IMG/VR virus record: IMGVR_UViG_3300033830_000018
Coordinates: 1-6,951 of that record
DNA: 6,951 nt
Reading direction: 5' to 3' (one strand)
Shown in pieces: positions 1 through 4,913 of this stretch. The stretch's first letter is position 1, and every line of letters begins with the position of its first letter. Below the pieces are notes generated by a model that saw nothing but the letters and a program-made list of their open reading frames with translations, was not told the DNA's origin and searched no databases. The position numbers and the translations under genes were made by a program.

Positions 1-180
1 CTGAAGTACTTGAAGACTAACACACATTCATTACGTTACGCACTAATCAGCTATCTCGCAAAAAACGCCGTAGACCCCGCAATTATTGCAAAGATAACTG
101 GGCATAAGAAACTAGACAGAATTATACAGTATACTCAAACAAAAGACGCCGTCGATATTTTGCGTAAGCTTTCTACCTAA
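1..180 (+). CDS. Tyrosine recombinase/integrase (XerC/D-like), C-terminal fragment; 5' part lies outside the window
   Basis: Not in the ORF track. Frame +1 translated by hand: LKYLKTNTHSLRYALISYLAKNAVDPAIIAKITGHKKLDRIIQYTQTKDAVDILRKLST*. It has the box II catalytic signature H-x-L-R ... G-H ... Y (HSLR, TGH, QY) with canonical spacing. Stop TAA at 178-180. Confidence 0.93.
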   Translation: MKYLKTNTHSLRYALISYLAKNAVDPAIIAKITGHKKLDRIIQYTQTKDAVDILRKLST

Positions 181-184
181 CTGT

Positions 185-202
185 CTCGACTACTTTTTAA
201 AG
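185..202 (+). promoter_or_regulatory. Archaeal TATA-type promoter (TTTTTAAA 194-201) preceded by CTCGAC
   Basis: TTTTTAAA ends about 24 nt before 225, just ahead of GGTGA and the next ORF. The same CTCGAC..TTTTTAAAG occurs on the minus strand at 4889-4874. Confidence 0.6.
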
Positions 203-239: not shown

Positions 240-434
240 ATGGTTGAAATAAAGTTAAGATGGAGGATAAAGTCAACGAAAAAGAATGGTAAGGTATACC
301 CTCTATATTATATATCAGTACCAGGTAAATCGGCTGTTTTTTTATTGCAATACGAACCATATTTAGACCCAGAAAGGCAAATAATCTTTTTCAGACCCAA
401 GCAGAACCAAAGCCAACAACCACAAAGTCAATAA
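240..434 (+). CDS. Small basic protein (64 aa), possible AbrB/SpoVT-like swapped-hairpin DNA-binding protein
   Basis: ORF track 228..434. ATG 240 is preferred because GGTGA (227-231) is a Shine-Dalgarno 8 nt upstream. The basic beta-rich N-terminus with KNGKVYPLYYISVP resembles the AbrB-type 'YxITIP' hairpin; Q/S-rich tail. The family call is by eye. Confidence 0.6.
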   Translation: MVEIKLRWRIKSTKKNGKVYPLYYISVPGKSAVFLLQYEPYLDPERQIIFFRPKQNQSQQPQSQ

Positions 435-463: not shown

Positions 464-1417
464 CTAAGCTAAGATAATCCTATTTAATATATAATTTAGT
501 TTCAGTCTCGGAAAGTCAGCTAAGTACCTTGGCGATATTTTACCTGACATTTCGTTGTACTGATATGCGATACTTAGCATGAAATTTGCCATGTCTAGTT
601 CTAATAAGCCTGGAGAATAGCTCTTGTCCCCGTAGTATCTCGAATAGATAGATATTGGGGATTCGTTTATAAGATCCGATATATTTTTGACAATATATTT
701 ATGCAAATCGAATATATTATTCAGGTTGCGTATTAATTCTTTATAACTTGCCTTATCCAAGGTGTACGCGTTATGAGATTTTAAGAAATTAAGGATGAAT
801 AACCCTAACCCCGTAGTCGTATACTTTCTCTTCTTCCCTTCATCGTTCGGGCTGATCTCACTGCTTAGACCCATTAGCAAAAGAGGGACAAGCCCGTTGC
901 GGAGATTTTCAACAGATAAATTATTGCAAGCGTCACCGCACACCTCCTTCGCAAACCTTAGGGCATCTTTTAATTCCGCGTTCAGCAGGGGGAGTTGAGA
1001 GTTGAAAATGTAAAGGTATTCACGCAAAGTCAATTTATTTATTGGGTTGTCTAGCTTCTCAGCTATTTTTAGAGATTTCATAGAGTCTGTTAATATTAAA
1101 AAGGAGAATATTGAGGCTTCCCTGACCCTGTAATATTTATCATCAATCAACTCAACTCCAGTAAATTCCGATATTGAATTAGCGTACTCGTCAGCCTTTT
1201 CCGTAAGCTTATCAAATACCTCTGGAAAACCCGACGCAGTCAGAGTTCTAATTTTTGCTGGCACGACAAAACCGTTTTTAGCTAATTCAATAACCTTAAG
1301 TGATGTTTTCTCAGCCTTGGTGCGTTTTGGACTCGTCCTGACGAGATCGACGAAGAATTCAAAGGAGTCGTTGACGATGTTTTTATTACCTTCTTCTTGA
1401 TAAAAATCCATAGCCAT
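464..1417 (-). CDS. Hypothetical protein (317 aa), predicted largely alpha-helical
   Basis: Long ORF with ATG at 1417. The minus-strand TATA-like TTTAAAAA (1447-1440) ends 23 nt upstream, consistent with a leaderless mRNA. No motif recognised. Confidence 0.85.
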   Translation of the reverse strand: MAMDFYQEEGNKNIVNDSFEFFVDLVRTSPKRTKAEKTSLKVIELAKNGFVVPAKIRTLTASGFPEVFDKLTEKADEYANSISEFTGVELIDDKYYRVREASIFSFLILTDSMKSLKIAEKLDNPINKLTLREYLYIFNSQLPLLNAELKDALRFAKEVCGDACNNLSVENLRNGLVPLLLMGLSSEISPNDEGKKRKYTTTGLGLFILNFLKSHNAYTLDKASYKELIRNLNNIFDLHKYIVKNISDLINESPISIYSRYYGDKSYSPGLLELDMANFMLSIAYQYNEMSGKISPRYLADFPRLKLNYILNRIILA

Positions 1418-1470: not shown

Positions 1471-1485
1471 GTATCTAGCTCGTCA

Positions 1486-1521
1486 TTTTCAGTCTAACTA
1501 GTTGGGCAGAAAATTTAAATA
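1486..1521 (+). promoter_or_regulatory. Conserved promoter module copy 1: imperfect inverted repeat + BRE (GCAGAAAA) + TATA (TTTAAATA 1514-1521)
   Basis: ttttc-agtc-taac-ta-gttg-ggca-gaaaa-tttaaata. TATA ends 24 nt before ATG 1545 (leaderless). Aligns without gaps to 1810-1845 and 2316-2351. Confidence 0.85.
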
Positions 1522-1544
1522 TCAGTCCTAACAATAGTTAAATA

Positions 1545-1736
1545 ATGACGCCCCAAGAAGTAGTAAAGGAAGAAATCATAAAAATGTTAGAAAAGGACTT
1601 CGACCAGCTACAAAAACTTATTGATTATATTGCAAAGACAAAAAATTTAGATTTAGACAGGAAAAAGGTTGGCGAAGCTTATTTTTTAGCCCAGAAAATT
1701 GACATGGAGTTATATAGATTAATTCTCTTGATCTAA
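1545..1736 (+). CDS. Small helical hypothetical protein (63 aa)
   Basis: ORF with its own consensus promoter at leaderless spacing and a downstream T-tract; amphipathic charged helices. Confidence 0.85.
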   Translation: MTPQEVVKEEIIKMLEKDFDQLQKLIDYIAKTKNLDLDRKKVGEAYFLAQKIDMELYRLILLI

Positions 1737-1747
1737 AAACTAACCCG

Positions 1748-1764
1748 TTTTTTATTTACTTTTT
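1748..1764 (+). terminator. Oligo-T terminator
   Basis: ttttttatttactttttt-like tract starting 12 nt after the stop; near-identical tract at 2236-2253. Confidence 0.7.
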
Positions 1765-1786
1765 CTCTCAAACAGCTGTTTTAGAG
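1765..1786. repeat. Palindromic motif copy 2 (CTCTCAAACAGCTGTTTTAGAG)
   Basis: 22-bp inverted repeat with a single mismatched pair, centre CAGCTG at 1773-1778. Confidence 0.9.
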
Positions 1787-1809
1787 TTGTTTCGCCGTAC
1801 CCAGCGTCC

Positions 1810-1845
1810 TTTTCTGCCTAACCTATTGGGCAGAAACTTTATATA
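1810..1845 (+). promoter_or_regulatory. Conserved promoter module copy 2 (TATA TTTATATA 1838-1845)
   Basis: ttttc-tgcc-taac-ct-attg-ggca-gaaac-tttatata. TTTCTGCC (1811-1818) and GGCAGAAA (1829-1836) form a perfect 8-bp inverted pair. Confidence 0.85.
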
Positions 1846-1875
1846 TTTCCAAACGAATATTATAATGGCGAAAAT

Positions 1876-2235
1876 ATGAGAACTCAAAAGGCTCAAAAGG
1901 GAAATAGAAGTCAAGAAGAAAACAAATTGTATTTTTGCAACCTTTGTGGTTTTATTGCAGAAAGTTATGAAGAACTTGATATGCATTATACGTTTGAACA
2001 CGACCCAGACCCCGATCTTGGTTATGAATTAGAAGTGATGTGGGAAAACAAAAAGAAAAAGAAGAAAGCAAAAGGTTTGAAGGGAAAGGCATTTGAACAG
2101 CTAGAATTATTAATAAACGGTGAGGATTACAAAAACGAGTATGTCGGATGGTGCCATATTCCTTACGAAATAATAACAAGGAAGAAAGGCAACAGATACG
2201 TAATTAAGGTCGTTCCAGGAGTTGAAATTTGTTAA
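1876..2235 (+). CDS. C2H2 zinc-finger protein (119 aa)
   Basis: C-x2-C-x12-H-x4-H motif (YFCNLCGFIAESYEELDMHYTFEH), then acidic DPDPD and a poly-Lys tract; has its own promoter and terminator. Confidence 0.85.
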   Translation: MRTQKAQKGNRSQEENKLYFCNLCGFIAESYEELDMHYTFEHDPDPDLGYELEVMWENKKKKKKAKGLKGKAFEQLELLINGEDYKNEYVGWCHIPYEIITRKKGNRYVIKVVPGVEIC

Positions 2236-2253
2236 TTTTTTTATTTATTTCTT
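2236..2253 (+). terminator. Oligo-T terminator
   Basis: tttttttatttatttctt immediately after TAA 2235. Confidence 0.7.
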
Positions 2254-2255
2254 CT

Positions 2256-2273
2256 CTCAAACAGCTGTTTGAG
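2256..2273. repeat. Palindromic motif copy 3 (CTCAAACAGCTGTTTGAG, perfect 18 bp)
   Basis: Perfect 18-bp palindrome read directly; centre CAGCTG at 2262-2267. Confidence 0.92.
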
Positions 2274-2315
2274 GTCTCTTTCTTTCCTCCTCTCCACCGA
2301 CCGCTCCAACTCCGT

Positions 2316-2351
2316 TTTTCCTCCTAACTGGTTATGCAGAAAATTTAAATA
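2316..2351 (+). promoter_or_regulatory. Conserved promoter module copy 3 (TATA TTTAAATA 2344-2351)
   Basis: ttttc-ctcc-taac-tg-gtta-tgca-gaaaa-tttaaata. GCAGAAAATTTAAATATC is identical to copy 1. Confidence 0.85.
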
Positions 2352-2382: not shown

Positions 2383-2961
2383 ATGTCCTCTCCACAAGTT
2401 AAGTCAAGCCCCCAACCACAAGTCAAAACAAATCCTAATTCTATAAATCAAACAAATGCTAGTCAAATAACCTGGGAGACCATCTTAAGGTCTCCCAGGA
2501 TTACCAAGGAACATGTAGAGTATGCAATTAACAATATTGATCAAGCTCCATTACTGCCCCATGAATTTGTTTACAGTCAAGTCGCTACTGATGTCAAAAT
2601 CTCCTACCCCCGCTCTATCGCAATTAGTGGTGTAGGTGGTATAATTGGTGCAGTACTTTCAATAAAACACACCGATAACATATCTTATTTCGTAACTACT
2701 GAGGAAGTTATTAATGCAACCGAGAATTCACCACTGTTTCTCGCAAAGTTCTCGTTAGAAAAACTAAGTAAAATCTATCAAAATACTGAGGTTATCATCC
2801 TGAAACTGAATGAATTTGAGAAAATTAAGTTGTTGCTAAGTCAAGGAGGAGTCTATATTTCTGGTTTGCCATATGAGATTACTATTCAGATAGCACAACT
2901 AGCGGGGTTTGGTAGGCTTTGGCACTTTTCACCAATTCAGCAAAAATTCTTTGTATTCTGA
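2383..2961 (+). CDS. Hypothetical protein (192 aa), possibly a degenerate P-loop/AAA+ (DnaC/IstB-like) fold
   Basis: ORF with its own promoter. S/P/Q/N-rich N-terminus followed by an alpha/beta pattern. The fold assignment is inference (see findings). Confidence 0.8.
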   Translation: MSSPQVKSSPQPQVKTNPNSINQTNASQITWETILRSPRITKEHVEYAINNIDQAPLLPHEFVYSQVATDVKISYPRSIAISGVGGIIGAVLSIKHTDNISYFVTTEEVINATENSPLFLAKFSLEKLSKIYQNTEVIILKLNEFEKIKLLLSQGGVYISGLPYEITIQIAQLAGFGRLWHFSPIQQKFFVF

Positions 2962-2989: not shown

Positions 2990-3748
2990 ATGACCGAATT
3001 TGAACTTGAGATAAAAAAGTTTAGATGGTTAATTTCCCAGGGTTATATAACACCACAAGAACTGGCATTTTACTCCAACTTTTACGATATCCAGATGACC
3101 AGTACTGTGAATTTTCAAGGATATGAGATATTGACTCCATTGTTTGTGTTGGCGAGACCAAGCAAGTTTGACCAAGTAAAAAGAGAACTGCCTCAGGCAG
3201 AAATAGCAGATCCATATAGCAAAAAGTTCCCATTAATTTCATTGATAAGTCTAGAAAAATTCATTAACACTCTAGTTAATCTCAAAATACCATACTACTT
3301 CTTCTCAGTGTGGTTGCATAGATCGTATAATGATATTCCAGAATCAGGTCAATTATTACTGAGTAAGCTCATTAATATGGCGAATTCTTCCTACAAATAT
3401 GTTATAAAAAGTTATAACATCCCTTCATCATCTTCAGAAGAACCAGCATTACCAACGGATCTAGAGAAAATAATATGTCATTTCAGGAAAATGTTGGGTA
3501 ATAAGGATAACTGCGACGATAATGACTGGTGGAAGTATAATTTGTGGAACAAATCTAGTGTAACTGGTACTACAACTGCAAATAGTACAACAACCATCGG
3601 AAGGAAAGAAATAGAGAAGTTAGCGTTGAAATACAATGTATCACCAATTTGTTTACAGTACGTTATAATGTATAACAAAAACCCGTGTCACCTTTCCCCA
3701 TTTCTTCTGCTCCAAATCAAATCAGACCTCTCTTCTTCCTCTTCATAA
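2990..3748 (+). CDS. Hypothetical protein (252 aa)
   Basis: ORF track 2909..3748. The in-frame ATG at 2990 is preferred because GAGGTG (2975-2980) precedes it and it avoids overlap with the upstream gene. Ser and Thr low-complexity linkers separate small Cys/His-containing C-terminal segments. Confidence 0.85.
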   Translation: MTEFELEIKKFRWLISQGYITPQELAFYSNFYDIQMTSTVNFQGYEILTPLFVLARPSKFDQVKRELPQAEIADPYSKKFPLISLISLEKFINTLVNLKIPYYFFSVWLHRSYNDIPESGQLLLSKLINMANSSYKYVIKSYNIPSSSSEEPALPTDLEKIICHFRKMLGNKDNCDDNDWWKYNLWNKSSVTGTTTANSTTTIGRKEIEKLALKYNVSPICLQYVIMYNKNPCHLSPFLLLQIKSDLSSSSS

Positions 3749-3772: not shown

Positions 3773-4294
3773 TCACAGGGTATTCGTATTCTCCTTTCTC
3801 TCTCTTTTCGCTATCTTTTTTGCATCTATTACTTCTATTATTCCCTCTTCCTCCAGATATTCTAGCACTGCGTCGCTATCATCTATCACTATTACCTTAT
3901 CTTGGTCGTATTTTTCCATTAGCTCCTTTACGATAATTCTCTTAAACTCATGGTCTTTTCTGTAGTCCTTCTCACCTCTCAGCACGACCTCATTCGGCTC
4001 TATCCCTATCTCTGACAGCTGTTTGAGAGTTTCCTTACGTTGTTTTTCCGAACGACCGCTGACTACTGCTATCACTTCTGGCTTTTCCTCCTCAATTAAT
4101 CGTTTGACGAACCTGATAACTTCCCACTTAGGTTCGTCCAGGTTCATGAACCTCGGTGATTGATAACATTCCCAAAACACACGGTCGGGTGTCCAAGATA
4201 ATGTTTTCTTGTCTCCTCTGGATATCTTCTCGCATTCGTACCACCTAGCAGAAGTATCGAAAAGCGTGCCGTCCAAATCTAGGATTAGCATCAT
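3773..4294 (-). CDS. HAD-superfamily phosphatase, similar to the 3'-phosphatase domain of T4 polynucleotide kinase/phosphatase (PseT)
   Basis: All four HAD motifs are present: I LILDLDGTL, II VVSGR, III RKDHEFK, IV VIDDSD. SGR, R-K-D-x3-K and DD match the PNKP phosphatase pattern. ATGA overlap with the upstream gene and a GGTGGAGG ribosome site. Confidence 0.9.
   Translation of the reverse strand: MMLILDLDGTLFDTSARWYECEKISRGDKKTLSWTPDRVFWECYQSPRFMNLDEPKWEVIRFVKRLIEEEKPEVIAVVSGRSEKQRKETLKQLSEIGIEPNEVVLRGEKDYRKDHEFKRIIVKELMEKYDQDKVIVIDDSDAVLEYLEEEGIIEVIDAKKIAKRERKENTNTL
4010..4029 (-). repeat. Palindromic motif copy 4, intragenic (minus strand CTCTCAAACAGCTGTCAGAG)
   Basis: 15-nt exact match (CTCTCAAACAGCTGT) to copies 2 and 3; lies inside the HAD gene, coding TLKQLSE. 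Confidence 0.65.
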
Positions 4295-4895: not shown

Positions 4896-4913
4896 CTCAA
4901 ACATATGTTTGAG
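4896..4913. repeat. Palindromic motif copy 5 (CTCAAACATATGTTTGAG, perfect 18 bp)
   Basis: Same arms as copy 3 with the central GC replaced by TA; sits between divergent promoters. Confidence 0.9.

What the first reader, a model, noticed from the sequence alone, without database searches (positions are those of the whole stretch)
1485..2351. Second, cryptic inverted repeat overlapping the BRE of all three cassette promoters
Seen: ATTTTCAGTCTAACTAGTTGGGCAGAAAAT (1485-1514), TTTCTGCCTAA-CCTA-TTGGGCAGAAA (1811-1836) and TTTTC-CTCC-TAAC-TG-GTTA-TGCA-GAAAA (2316-2343) share one dyad axis at identical spacing from the TATA box. In copies 1 and 2 most stem imperfections are T-G pairs on the top strand, so the top strand would fold better than the bottom. 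Established: repressors that overlap BRE/TATA block TFB/TBP binding in archaea. Inference: either an operator that shuts off these strong promoters (Aca-like control) or a strand-specific hairpin acting in ssDNA or RNA.
Basis: partly seen in the sequence, partly recalled or inferred. Interest (0 to 1): 0.6.

Follow-up and report, generated by a model that had tools for sequence, protein, structure and literature searches.

The report
Palindromic operator on viral early promoters
The three repeated promoters in this archaeal virus fragment each carry a real 26-bp palindrome over the TFB-binding element; it is a family-wide protein-binding operator already noted in a sister virus, not a DNA or RNA hairpin, and a small gene 1 kb upstream is a good candidate for the protein that binds it.

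Summary
The window is a fragment of a Sulfolobus monocaudavirus (SMV4/SMV3-like). Three promoter blocks (1487-1512, 1811-1836, 2317-2342) share the dyad TTTC-N3-CTAAC-NN-GTTRG-GCA-GAAA. Its right arm is the BRE, and the TATA box follows one base later.

I collected 57 copies in SMV1-4 and related metagenome contigs. The arms are conserved as sequence. There are no compensatory changes and no strand bias, so the hairpin reading is not supported and the operator reading is.

This is already in print. Bhoobalan-Chitty et al. 2024 list the SMV3 orthologues of these three genes as anti-defence genes with a shared regulatory motif, and note inverted repeats over the BRE in SMV2.

New here:
- The dyad also lies about 90 nt upstream of the capsid genes gp03 and gp11.
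- The likely binder is window ORF64 (240-431). It is predicted to be an intertwined dimer, with a weak structural match to MraZ.
- In relatives this protein is fused in tandem, and its operator variant recurs in its own promoter.

No binding has been shown.

The parts
1487..1512 (+). Operator (pal2) copy 1. It is a 26-bp dyad; its right arm 1501-1512 contains the BRE (CAGAAA, 1507-1512).
1514..1521 (+). TATA box of promoter P1 (TTTAAATA), 23 nt before the ATG of ORF63.
1811..1836 (+). Operator (pal2) copy 2, the best palindrome of the three (10 of 12 Watson-Crick pairs plus one T.G).
1838..1845 (+). TATA box of promoter P2 (TTTATATA).
2317..2342 (+). Operator (pal2) copy 3, the weakest dyad (9 of 12 pairs). 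The inner CTAAC/GTTA and outer TTTC/GAAA blocks are kept.
2344..2351 (+). TATA box of promoter P3 (TTTAAATA).
1545..1736 (+). ORF63, first gene under the operator. It belongs to the SSV1 D-63 family (Pfam PF20940, E 5.6e-16) and is the orthologue of SMV3 gp48 (ADG.67 in PMC11065993).
1876..2235 (+). ORF119, second gene under the operator. It has a C2H2 zinc-finger-like N-terminus (weak Pfam hits only) and is the orthologue of SMV3 gp47 (ADG.04).
2383..2961 (+). ORF192, third gene under the operator. It is a virion structural protein (PHROG 17386, E 2e-83) and the orthologue of SMV3 gp46 (ADG.71) and SMV4 gp39.
2990..3748 (+). ORF252, a virion structural protein (PHROG 16306), probably co-transcribed from P3.
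240..434 (+). ORF64, the candidate operator-binding protein. It is small and very basic, and lies directly after the integrase and before the cassette array. A homodimer is predicted. Fused tandem homologues give a weak structural match to MraZ.
170..181 (+). A perfect copy of the operator's distal arm (TTTCTACCTAAC) at the end of the integrase gene, 12 nt before the TATA-like TTTTTAAA (194-201) upstream of ORF64. The layout matches the autoregulatory sites of the tandem homologues, but the proximal arm does not match.
1767..1784 (.). The other palindrome (pal1, CTCAAACAGCTGTTTTAG), 44 nt upstream of operator copy 2. It is part of the cassette layout but is a separate, genome-wide element.
2256..2273 (.). 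pal1 (CTCAAACAGCTGTTTGAG), 61 nt upstream of operator copy 3.

Best explanation
The 26-bp dyad is a double-stranded DNA operator specific to the SMV clade of large spindle-shaped Sulfolobus viruses. Its promoter-proximal arm is the BRE of a consensus-strength BRE/TATA promoter. A dimeric protein bound to it would therefore compete with TFB (and TBP) and shut the promoter off after an initial burst, giving Aca-like control of a set of accessory and anti-defence genes. The most likely binder is the virus's own ORF64 family (window 240-431; SMV1 gp33, SMV3 gp49, SMV4 gp43, SMV2 gp40). This is a small basic beta-rich protein that forms an intertwined homodimer, or a single-chain pseudo-dimer where two copies are fused, with a weak structural match to MraZ. 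Shown: the element, its conservation, its position, the lack of covariation, and the co-variation of operator variant with regulator lineage. Inferred: that this protein binds it, and that binding represses.
For: (1) The element is real and family-wide. There are 57 distinct copies at 6 or fewer mismatches of 24 in the window, SMV1-4 and about 12 metagenome contigs. At 8 or fewer mismatches there are 42 hits, against 4-12 in Markov controls. (2) The left arm is conserved in an unbiased test. A scan of IMG/VR seeded only on the right arm plus TATA gave 14 SMV-type hits with 1-6 left-arm mismatches of 12. Of 31 hits on unrelated contigs, 30 had 7-12 mismatches. (3) The symmetry is in conserved sequence, not in pairing: 81% of cells pair, but covariation is below shuffles and there is no strand bias. 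(4) The dyad exists without an adjacent TATA box at nine sites, about 45-55 nt upstream of another BRE/TATA, so it is more than a BRE with a chance mirror image. (5) Phyletic match: all four complete SMV genomes have both the dyad and ORF64, while ATSV, STSV1, STSV2 and ATV have neither. (6) In the window and its single-domain relatives (and L380), ORF64 sits between the integrase and the cassette array. (7) Tandem fusions of the domain make up 8 of the 16 clusters at 50% identity. A homodimer of window ORF64 is predicted with score 0.64, best of 3 controls 0.00; that mark was reached by 20 of 30 proteins solved as pairs of one chain and 1 of 23 solved as single chains. The runs agree in at least 96% of contacts, and the partner's pLDDT is at least 83. 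(8) The model of SMV2 gp40 (pLDDT 72.9, pTM 0.63) is twice beta-beta-alpha-beta-beta. Its only structural match with Z of 5 or more is MraZ, 1n0e_A (Z 6.2, rmsd 4.3, 98 residues aligned), followed by B3 DNA-binding domains at Z 3.3-3.9. (9) Operator and regulator co-vary. In five tandem lineages (SMV2, L368, L370, L374, L377) plus L373, the lineage's own operator variant is found both in the regulator's own promoter, where it abuts the TATA box, and in the BRE-overlapping promoters of the same contig. In L374 the same 19 nt occur at 2231-2249 and 309-327. (10) Published precedent: inverted repeats overlapping the BRE in the SMV2 anti-defence motif are read as a repressor site (PMC11065993). 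F55 and the AbrB-like C68 bind sites overlapping a BRE (PMC5569661).
Against: There are no binding, footprint or expression data for this virus. The fold assignment is weak. Pfam gave no hit, a PDB profile search gave nothing, Foldseek found nothing at E 0.001 or better and the ESM Atlas searches were uninformative; a Z of 6.2 can be a common arrangement. In the window itself ORF64's upstream region has only the distal half of the operator, and those bases also encode the integrase C-terminus. Many other SMV-specific genes share the same phyletic pattern, and so does the second palindrome pal1. The operator-regulator co-variation rests on a handful of related lineages, and promoter copies inside one contig may be recent duplicates. 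P3 drives virion structural proteins, which is not what an early anti-defence regulon predicts. The sites upstream of the SMV1a capsid genes gp03 and gp11, which the published transcriptome reports as highly and continuously expressed, suggest the bound factor is not simply a repressor.
Confidence: 0.55

Rival explanations
1. The dyad is a protein operator, but the binder is not ORF64. It could be another viral protein (for SMV2 the literature proposes the coiled-coil protein gp37), the aCcr1-like RHH protein, the D-63-like ORF63, or a host transcription factor.
For: PMC11065993 proposes SMV2 gp37. The RHH gene is the only family that sits under a BRE-overlapping dyad promoter in all four complete SMV genomes. 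ORF63 (SMV3 gp48) is labelled an anti-defence-associated regulator in that paper. The evidence for ORF64 is indirect.
Against: gp37 has no homologue in SMV1, SMV3, SMV4, the window, L368 or L370; by eye its sequence contains two long hydrophobic stretches. The beta-strand of the RHH protein (MRVVTFK) is the same in ATV, which has no dyad. SMV3 gp63 is reported to bind the unrelated 9-bp aCcr1-box (PMC9976878). D-63 homologues are missing from SMV1 and SMV2. A host factor would not explain why the element is confined to the SMV clade, or why its sequence changes with the ORF64 lineage.
Confidence: 0.22
2. The dyad is an upstream activating site. The bound dimer recruits or stabilises TFB/TBP, so these promoters are strong only when the viral factor is present.
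For: Nine copies lie about 45-55 nt upstream of a separate BRE/TATA, a position typical of archaeal activators. In SMV1a they precede exactly gp03 (the major capsid protein, the most highly expressed gene throughout infection) and gp11. These are the two 'full-time/late' exceptions inside the early region.
Against: In 44 copies the proximal arm is the BRE itself, and in the regulators' own promoters the arm abuts the TATA box. These geometries are known for repression (F55, C68). The BRE/TATA already matches the strong host consensus described in PMC11065993, so no activator is needed.
Confidence: 0.12
3. The element is a strand-specific hairpin acting in single-stranded DNA or RNA (attC-like recombination site, replication or packaging signal, or RNA element).
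For: In window copies 1 and 2 the imperfections are mostly T.G and the top strand folds better. In the nine TATA-less copies the top strand folds better in 7. The cassettes lie next to an integrase.
Against: There is no compensatory change in any of 12 pairs over 50 distinct copies; covariation is 0.116 against 0.134 in shuffles, and 495 of 500 shuffles score at least as high. Left-arm positions 5-6 vary with no change in their partners. Over 44 promoter copies the bottom strand folds better in 27 and the top in 15, and G.T and A.C imperfections are equal. Copy 3 does not fold above shuffles. No Rfam family matches. The element is upstream of its own TATA box. The seven top-biased TATA-less copies come from two orthologous loci.
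Confidence: 0.03
4. No dedicated factor exists. The left arm is a relic of bidirectional promoters (two BREs back to back), or it is conserved only because the cassettes spread by recombination through their promoter blocks.
For: SMV2 44728-44753 has a TATA box on both sides and serves the divergent genes gp51 and gp52. The cassette contents differ between viruses while the promoter blocks are kept.
Against: Only 1 of 57 copies is bidirectional. The left arm is conserved across about 20 unrelated downstream gene families and across viruses that differ by 15-25% in DNA. The TATA-less copies, and the lineage-specific variants that recur in the regulator's own promoter, are not explained.
Confidence: 0.06

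Closest known systems
Virus-specific regulatory sequence of predicted anti-defence genes in SMV2, SMV3 and SMV4 (Bhoobalan-Chitty et al., Nat Commun 2024, PMC11065993)
   Same: It is the same virus clade and the same architecture. The core is a strong BRE plus TTTAWATA, flanked by a conserved virus-specific sequence that precedes several single genes. [quoted passage not shown] SMV3 gp48, gp47 and gp46, the orthologues of window ORF63, ORF119 and ORF192, are in its gene list, as is SMV4 gp40 at the syntenic position.
   Different: This window is a different, unpublished SMV-type genome fragment. The paper names gp37 as the likely SMV2 binder, whereas my comparison favours the gp40/ORF64 family. 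The paper does not describe the TATA-less copies upstream of the capsid genes; it lists SMV4 gp02, the homologue of the SMV1 major capsid protein, as an anti-defence gene.
Aca-controlled anti-CRISPR promoters (bacterial Aca1/Aca2; proposed Aca8 in rudiviruses)
   Same: A strong early promoter carries inverted repeats overlapping the core promoter elements, with proposed shut-off by a small dimeric DNA-binding protein of the same element.
   Different: Aca proteins are HTH or wHTH proteins and are usually encoded in the operon they repress. Here the candidate is beta-rich and gives only a weak match to MraZ, and in the window it has its own promoter upstream of the cassettes. Neither repression nor anti-defence function has been shown.
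pSSVx C68, an AbrB-like swapped-hairpin transcription factor of a Sulfolobus plasmid-virus (reviewed in PMC5569661)
   Same: It is a small (~68 aa) swapped-hairpin dimer from a Sulfolobus mobile element that binds a site overlapping the BRE of its own promoter. Its recognition motif ends in TTTTC, like the outer arm here.
   Different: There is no detectable sequence similarity to ORF64. C68 sites are not the 26-bp dyad. C68 is not known to control a multi-gene regulon.
SSV1 F55 repressor sites on the T5, T6, Tind and Tlys promoters
   Same: A virus-encoded repressor has sites overlapping the BRE and TSS of several early promoters and of its own gene.
   Different: F55 is an RHH protein that binds tandem direct repeats, and it belongs to a different virus family.
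MraZ (UPF0040; PDB 1n0e)
   Same: It is a single chain made of two beta-beta-alpha-beta-beta (AbrB-like) repeats and binds DNA. It is the best and only structural match with Z of 5 or more to the SMV2 gp40 model.
   Different: MraZ is bacterial, forms large rings and binds direct repeats. The match is modest (Z 6.2, 12% identity) and Foldseek does not find it.

Membership tests
Archaeal-virus early/anti-defence regulatory sequence (PMC11065993) | Core promoter with a purine-rich BRE directly upstream of a TTTAWATA TATA box | tested here: met
   All three copies read GCAGAAA-N-TTTAWATA. The profile of 44 copies shows the same.
Archaeal-virus early/anti-defence regulatory sequence (PMC11065993) | Sequence flanking the core promoter is shared by several genes of the same viral genome | tested here: met
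   The window has three 42-nt copies at 74-81% identity. SMV1 has 3 copies and SMV2-4 have 6-7 each.
Archaeal-virus early/anti-defence regulatory sequence (PMC11065993) | Orthologous genes are on the published list | tested here: met
   SMV3 gp46, gp47 and gp48 and SMV4 gp40 are in Supplementary Data 1. Orthology was shown by BLAST clustering.
Archaeal-virus early/anti-defence regulatory sequence (PMC11065993) | Immediate-early expression followed by shut-off; downstream genes act against host defence | not testable with these tools
   No transcriptome exists for this virus. ORF192 and ORF252 are virion proteins, which argues against a purely anti-defence regulon.
Aca-type autoregulated repressor circuit | Inverted repeat overlapping core promoter elements | tested here: met
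   The proximal arm is the BRE in 44 copies. In the regulators' own promoters the arm abuts the TATA box.
Aca-type autoregulated repressor circuit | The repressor's own promoter carries the operator | tested here: inconclusive
   This is met in six tandem-gene contigs (SMV2, L368, L370, L373, L374, L377). In the window only the distal half-site is present, at 170-181.
Aca-type autoregulated repressor circuit | Specific binding and repression demonstrated | not testable with these tools
   This needs EMSA or footprinting and in vitro transcription.
AbrB/MazE/MraZ swapped-hairpin DNA-binding proteins (for ORF64/gp40) | beta-beta-alpha-beta-beta unit that forms an intertwined dimer or tandem pseudo-dimer | tested here: met
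   The model topology is E-E-H-E-E twice. The homodimer prediction passes its controls and has a symmetric interface that includes the strands. Eight tandem clusters were found.
AbrB/MazE/MraZ swapped-hairpin DNA-binding proteins (for ORF64/gp40) | Significant sequence or structure similarity to family members | tested here: inconclusive
   Pfam gave no hit, the PDB profile search gave none and Foldseek gave none. VIA-align puts MraZ 1n0e_A first at Z 6.2, about 2 units above the next hit.
Functional hairpin (RNA element or ssDNA site such as attC) | Base pairs maintained by compensatory substitutions | tested here: not met
   Only 2 of 12 pairs show any double change (3 of 600 cells). The covariation score is below the shuffle mean.
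Functional hairpin (RNA element or ssDNA site such as attC) | Consistent strand asymmetry | tested here: not met
   Among 44 promoter copies the top strand folds better in 15 and the bottom in 27. G.T imperfections are 1.30 per site and A.C 1.20 per site.

The most novel reading that the evidence does not exclude
The dyad is the operator of a previously unrecognised family of small viral transcription factors, possibly MraZ/AbrB-like (window ORF64, SMV2 gp40). The family has fused more than once into single-chain pseudo-dimers and has diversified together with its operator, from symmetric CTAAC/GTTAG to asymmetric CTTAC/GTCAG, CCAAC and CTCGRC types. One factor would autoregulate itself, shut off a regulon of BRE-overlapping accessory and anti-defence promoters, and act from about -90 on the capsid genes gp03 and gp11. 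That would give SMV-type viruses a one-protein temporal switch.
Probability: 0.35. Interest if true: 0.65.

Novelty: new member of a known kind. Interest (0 to 1): 0.45.

Why it matters
How archaeal viruses time their gene expression is poorly understood, and very few virus-encoded regulators have a known operator. This element marks a regulon of about 20 unrelated accessory gene families in SMV-type viruses. The families include an AcrIII-1 homologue, a cell-cycle regulator (aCcr1 homologue) and a Cmr7A-like gene, so it is a practical handle for finding anti-defence genes in metagenomes. The candidate regulator and its lineage-specific operator variants give a directly testable protein-DNA recognition code. 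They also correct the current literature candidate (SMV2 gp37) and one likely false positive (the capsid gene listed as an anti-defence gene).

Tried and rejected
- **Scans that were too loose.** The first IMG/VR scan (BRE+TATA only) returned unrelated contigs. Neither says anything about host genomes, so a host copy of the motif remains untested.
- **megablast to plasmids.** No match.
- **RHH (aCcr1-like) protein as binder.** I considered it because it sits under a dyad promoter in all four SMVs. I rejected it because ATV has the same DNA-reading strand but no dyad, and because SMV3 gp63 is reported to bind the aCcr1-box.
- **SMV2 gp37 as binder.** Rejected.
- **D-63-like ORF63 as binder.** Rejected as the universal binder, because it is absent from SMV1 and SMV2.
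- **Pfam on ten SMV-core small proteins.** Nothing useful.
- **Fold assignment of gp40.** Foldseek against PDB, ESM Atlas by shape and by features, and a PDB sequence-profile search all gave nothing significant.
- **Strict 'tandem means asymmetric operator' rule.** It does not hold. L374 and L377 have tandem proteins with near-symmetric CCAAC-type operators. What holds is lineage-specific matching of the own-promoter and regulon operators.
- **Rfam.** No family matched. The bacterial-type terminator scan flags copy 2 only because the TATA box is T-rich.
- **RNA-seq read mapping.** Not attempted. The only relevant runs are for SMV1a, and I expected them to be available only as assembled contigs, which cannot show transcript starts or levels.
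Full report
**What the window is.** The 6951-bp record is a fragment held in the IMG/VR viral collection. It aligns to Sulfolobus monocaudavirus SMV4 over 89% of its length at 83.6% identity, and to SMV3 from position 1810 onward.

The gene order is:
- the integrase 3' end (1-180);
- ORF64 (240-431);
- a 317-aa gene on the minus strand;
- three short cassettes: ORF63 (SSV1 D-63 family, Pfam E 5.6e-16), ORF119 (C2H2-like), and ORF192 with ORF252 (virion structural proteins by PHROG);
- a polynucleotide kinase/phosphatase and SMV core genes.

**The observation.** They form one repeat family of 42 nt.

- In a 12+2+12 register they are TTTC-N3-CTAAC-NN-GTTRG-GCA-GAAA.
- They have 9, 10 and 9 Watson-Crick pairs of 12.
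- In all three, one base separates the dyad from the TATA box.
- The T.G remark and the better folding of the top strand hold for copies 1 and 2 but not for copy 3.

Pattern and mismatch scans found the dyad in SMV1, SMV2, SMV3, SMV4 and about a dozen hot-spring metagenome contigs. That is 57 distinct sites at 6 or fewer mismatches of 24. Markov controls gave 4-12 hits at a looser threshold (8 mismatches) where the real data gave 42.

To avoid circularity I scanned IMG/VR with the right arm plus TATA only.
- The 14 hits on SMV-type contigs had left arms within 1-6 mismatches of TTTCTGCCTAAC.
- Of the 31 hits on unrelated contigs, 30 had 7-12 mismatches.

So the left arm is conserved. Its information lies in TTTC (positions 1-4) and CTAAC (positions 8-12). 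Positions 5-6 are free. ATSV, STSV1, STSV2 and ATV have no copy.

**Hairpin or operator.**
- On 53 aligned copies, 81% of cells pair, against 28-48% for slid partners. Every pair has essentially one Watson-Crick type, and the covariation score (0.116) is below the shuffle mean (0.134).
- Left positions 5-6 vary while their partners, the CA of the BRE, stay fixed.
- Among 44 promoter-linked copies, G.T and A.C imperfections are equally common. The bottom strand folds better in 27 and the top in 15.
- Rfam has no match.

Both arms are therefore kept as sequence. That is the signature of a symmetric protein-binding site, not of a folded strand.

**Two architectures.**
- *BRE-overlapping copies.* In 44 copies the proximal arm is the BRE of a consensus promoter. 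One of these (SMV2 44728) serves two divergent genes. These promoters precede about 20 unrelated gene families. Among them are the D-63-like gene, the zinc-finger gene, the virion protein pair, an aCcr1-like RHH gene, SMV4 gp61 (listed as an AcrIII-1 homologue in PMC11065993) and a Cmr7A-like gene.
- *TATA-less copies.* Nine copies have no adjacent TATA box and lie 45-55 nt upstream of a separate BRE/TATA. In SMV1/SMV1a these precede gp03 and gp11. The SMV1a transcriptome paper singles out exactly these two genes. They are 'full-time/late' exceptions inside the early region, and gp03 (the major capsid protein) is the most highly expressed gene throughout infection (PMC12199143).

**What is already known.** Bhoobalan-Chitty et al. 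2024 defined virus-specific regulatory sequences around strong promoters of predicted anti-defence genes.
- Their list includes SMV3 gp46, gp47 and gp48 and SMV4 gp40, gp02 and gp61.
- Window ORF63, ORF119 and ORF192 are the orthologues of SMV3 gp48, gp47 and gp46.

The finding is therefore a new instance of a described element.

**Who binds it: candidates set aside.**
- gp37 has no homologue in SMV1, SMV3, SMV4 or the window; by eye its sequence contains two long hydrophobic stretches.
- The RHH protein is under a dyad promoter in all four SMVs. But it shares its DNA-reading strand with ATV, which lacks the dyad, and it is reported to bind the aCcr1-box.

**Who binds it: the case for ORF64.**
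- *Distribution and position.* ORF64 is present in all SMVs and absent from the four outgroups. In the window and its single-domain relatives (and L380) it lies between the integrase and the cassettes.
- *Tandem fusions.* Its SMV2 homologue gp40 is a tandem fusion of two such domains. An exhaustive profile search found 16 clusters, 8 of them tandem. Some are recent duplications and others are old and diverged.
- *Predicted dimer.* A homodimer of window ORF64 is predicted with score 0.64, best of 3 controls 0.00. That mark was reached by 20 of 30 proteins solved as pairs of one chain and 1 of 23 solved as single chains. The runs agree in at least 96% of contacts, and pLDDT is at least 83.
- *Fold.* The gp40 model is twice beta-beta-alpha-beta-beta. 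Its only match with Z of 5 or more is MraZ, the tandem AbrB-like factor (Z 6.2, rmsd 4.3, 98 residues aligned). Foldseek, Pfam and the PDB profile search found nothing.

**Operator and regulator co-vary.** This is the most telling result. Each tandem lineage carries its own operator variant in two places on the same contig. One is the regulator's own promoter, where the proximal arm runs into the TATA box. The other is the set of BRE-overlapping promoters.

| Lineage | Regulator's own promoter | BRE-overlapping promoters |
|---|---|---|
| SMV2, L368, L370 | CTGAC-AG-GTAAG | CTTAC-NN-GTCAG (the same site inverted) |
| L374 | 2231-2249 | 309-327 (identical 19 nt) |
| L377 | CCAAC type | CCAAC type |
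| L373 | CTCGRC type | CTCGRC type |

A recent tandem duplicate (L380) keeps the classical sites. In the window, ORF64's upstream region has the same layout but only the distal arm matches (170-181), and those bases also encode the integrase C-terminus.

**Mechanism.**
- *Shown:* the element, its position over the BRE, its conservation as sequence, its clade restriction, and its co-variation with the ORF64 family.
- *Established knowledge:* archaeal repressors that overlap the BRE/TATA block TFB/TBP (F55, C68; PMC5569661).
- *Inferred:* ORF64 dimers bind the dyad and shut off P1-P3 after an initial burst, and the tandem forms autoregulate. What the factor does from about -90 of the capsid genes is open.

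I give 0.8 to 'protein operator', about 0.55 to the full model with ORF64 as a repressor, and 0.03 to the hairpin.

**Caveats.**
- Nothing has been tested at the bench.
- The fold match is modest.
- The co-varying lineages are few and related.
- The second palindrome pal1 shares the same clade distribution, so phyletic co-occurrence alone cannot assign ORF64 to one element or the other.
- P3 drives structural proteins, so 'anti-defence regulon' is too narrow a label.

Noticed in passing
window 1767-1784, 2256-2273, 4896-4913 (and 1455-1470 partial; 4010-4027 inside the kinase gene): The other palindrome, CTCAAACAGCTGTTTGAG (pal1), is a genome-wide SMV element. SMV1, SMV3 and SMV4 each have 26-31 copies and SMV2 has 13, against fewer than 1 expected; STSV1, STSV2 and ATV have none above the chance level (0-1 hit). 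[quoted passage not shown] Elsewhere its right arm runs into a TTTAAAAA box. In the cassettes it lies 44-61 nt upstream of the operator. It is probably a second operator or an initiator-region element. The copy at 4010 is conserved as coding sequence.
   Followed up: partly
window 170-201: The last codons of the integrase gene spell a perfect distal operator arm (TTTCTACCTAAC), followed 12 nt later by TTTTTAAA upstream of ORF64. This is conserved in L124, L152, L153, L158, SMV3 and SMV4. It may be a half-operator for ORF64 autoregulation, or it may be kept only by the coding constraint.
   Followed up: partly
L132 (SMV1) 41960-41757 minus strand; L367 (SMV1a) near 38876: SMV1 has an unannotated aCcr1-like RHH gene (GTG start, MRVVTFKV...) on the strand opposite to annotated gp40. 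It is driven by SMV1's only BRE-overlapping dyad promoter. Between TATA and start codon, this promoter and those of the SMV3 and L195 homologues contain GTAATAC, which resembles the published aCcr1-box.
   Followed up: partly
L129 (SMV4) 649-674 and gp02 (760-1230): SMV4 gp02 is listed as anti-defence gene ADG.73 in PMC11065993. It is the homologue of SMV1 gp03, which the 2025 SMV1a paper calls the major capsid protein. It was probably picked up because of the TATA-less dyad upstream, so it is a likely false positive of the motif method.
   Followed up: partly
L128 (SMV2) 44728-44753: A single dyad is flanked by TATA boxes on both sides and serves the divergent genes gp51(-gp50 RHH) and gp52. 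It is a compact bidirectional promoter in which both arms act as a BRE.
   Followed up: no
L368 4109-6309: The SMV2-like contig with the tandem regulator also encodes proteins with RAMP (weak) and Csf3 hits and a PAPS reductase. This may be a virus-borne type IV CRISPR-Cas-like module.
   Followed up: no
L379 821-1483 (minus) and 1524-1549: A classical dyad promoter drives a Cmr7A-like gene (Pfam PF19021), divergent from a single-domain ORF64 homologue (P0044). A viral copy of a type III-B subunit is a plausible anti-CRISPR decoy.
   Followed up: no
L378 1271-2281; L370 3827-5065: Contigs carrying ORF64-family genes also encode a TFIIB/TFB-like protein (336 aa, L378) and a Ser/Thr protein kinase (412 aa, L370).
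   Followed up: no
L375 ~960-1030, L378 ~3500-3570, L370 2440-2500 (minus): A divergent single/tandem clade of the ORF64 family (P0038, P0041, P0042) has a different conserved own-promoter element, AAACAGGTGAGAAAACTTTTTA. Its AAACAGGTG part resembles a pal1 half-site. This hints that paralogues of the family may read pal1.
   Followed up: no
window 464-1417 minus strand: The 317-aa ORF has no Pfam or PHROG match. In SMV4 it is split into two genes (gp41, gp42). Its promoter shares the 1418-1544 intergenic region with P1, and a pal1 half-site lies just upstream of its TATA box.
   Followed up: no
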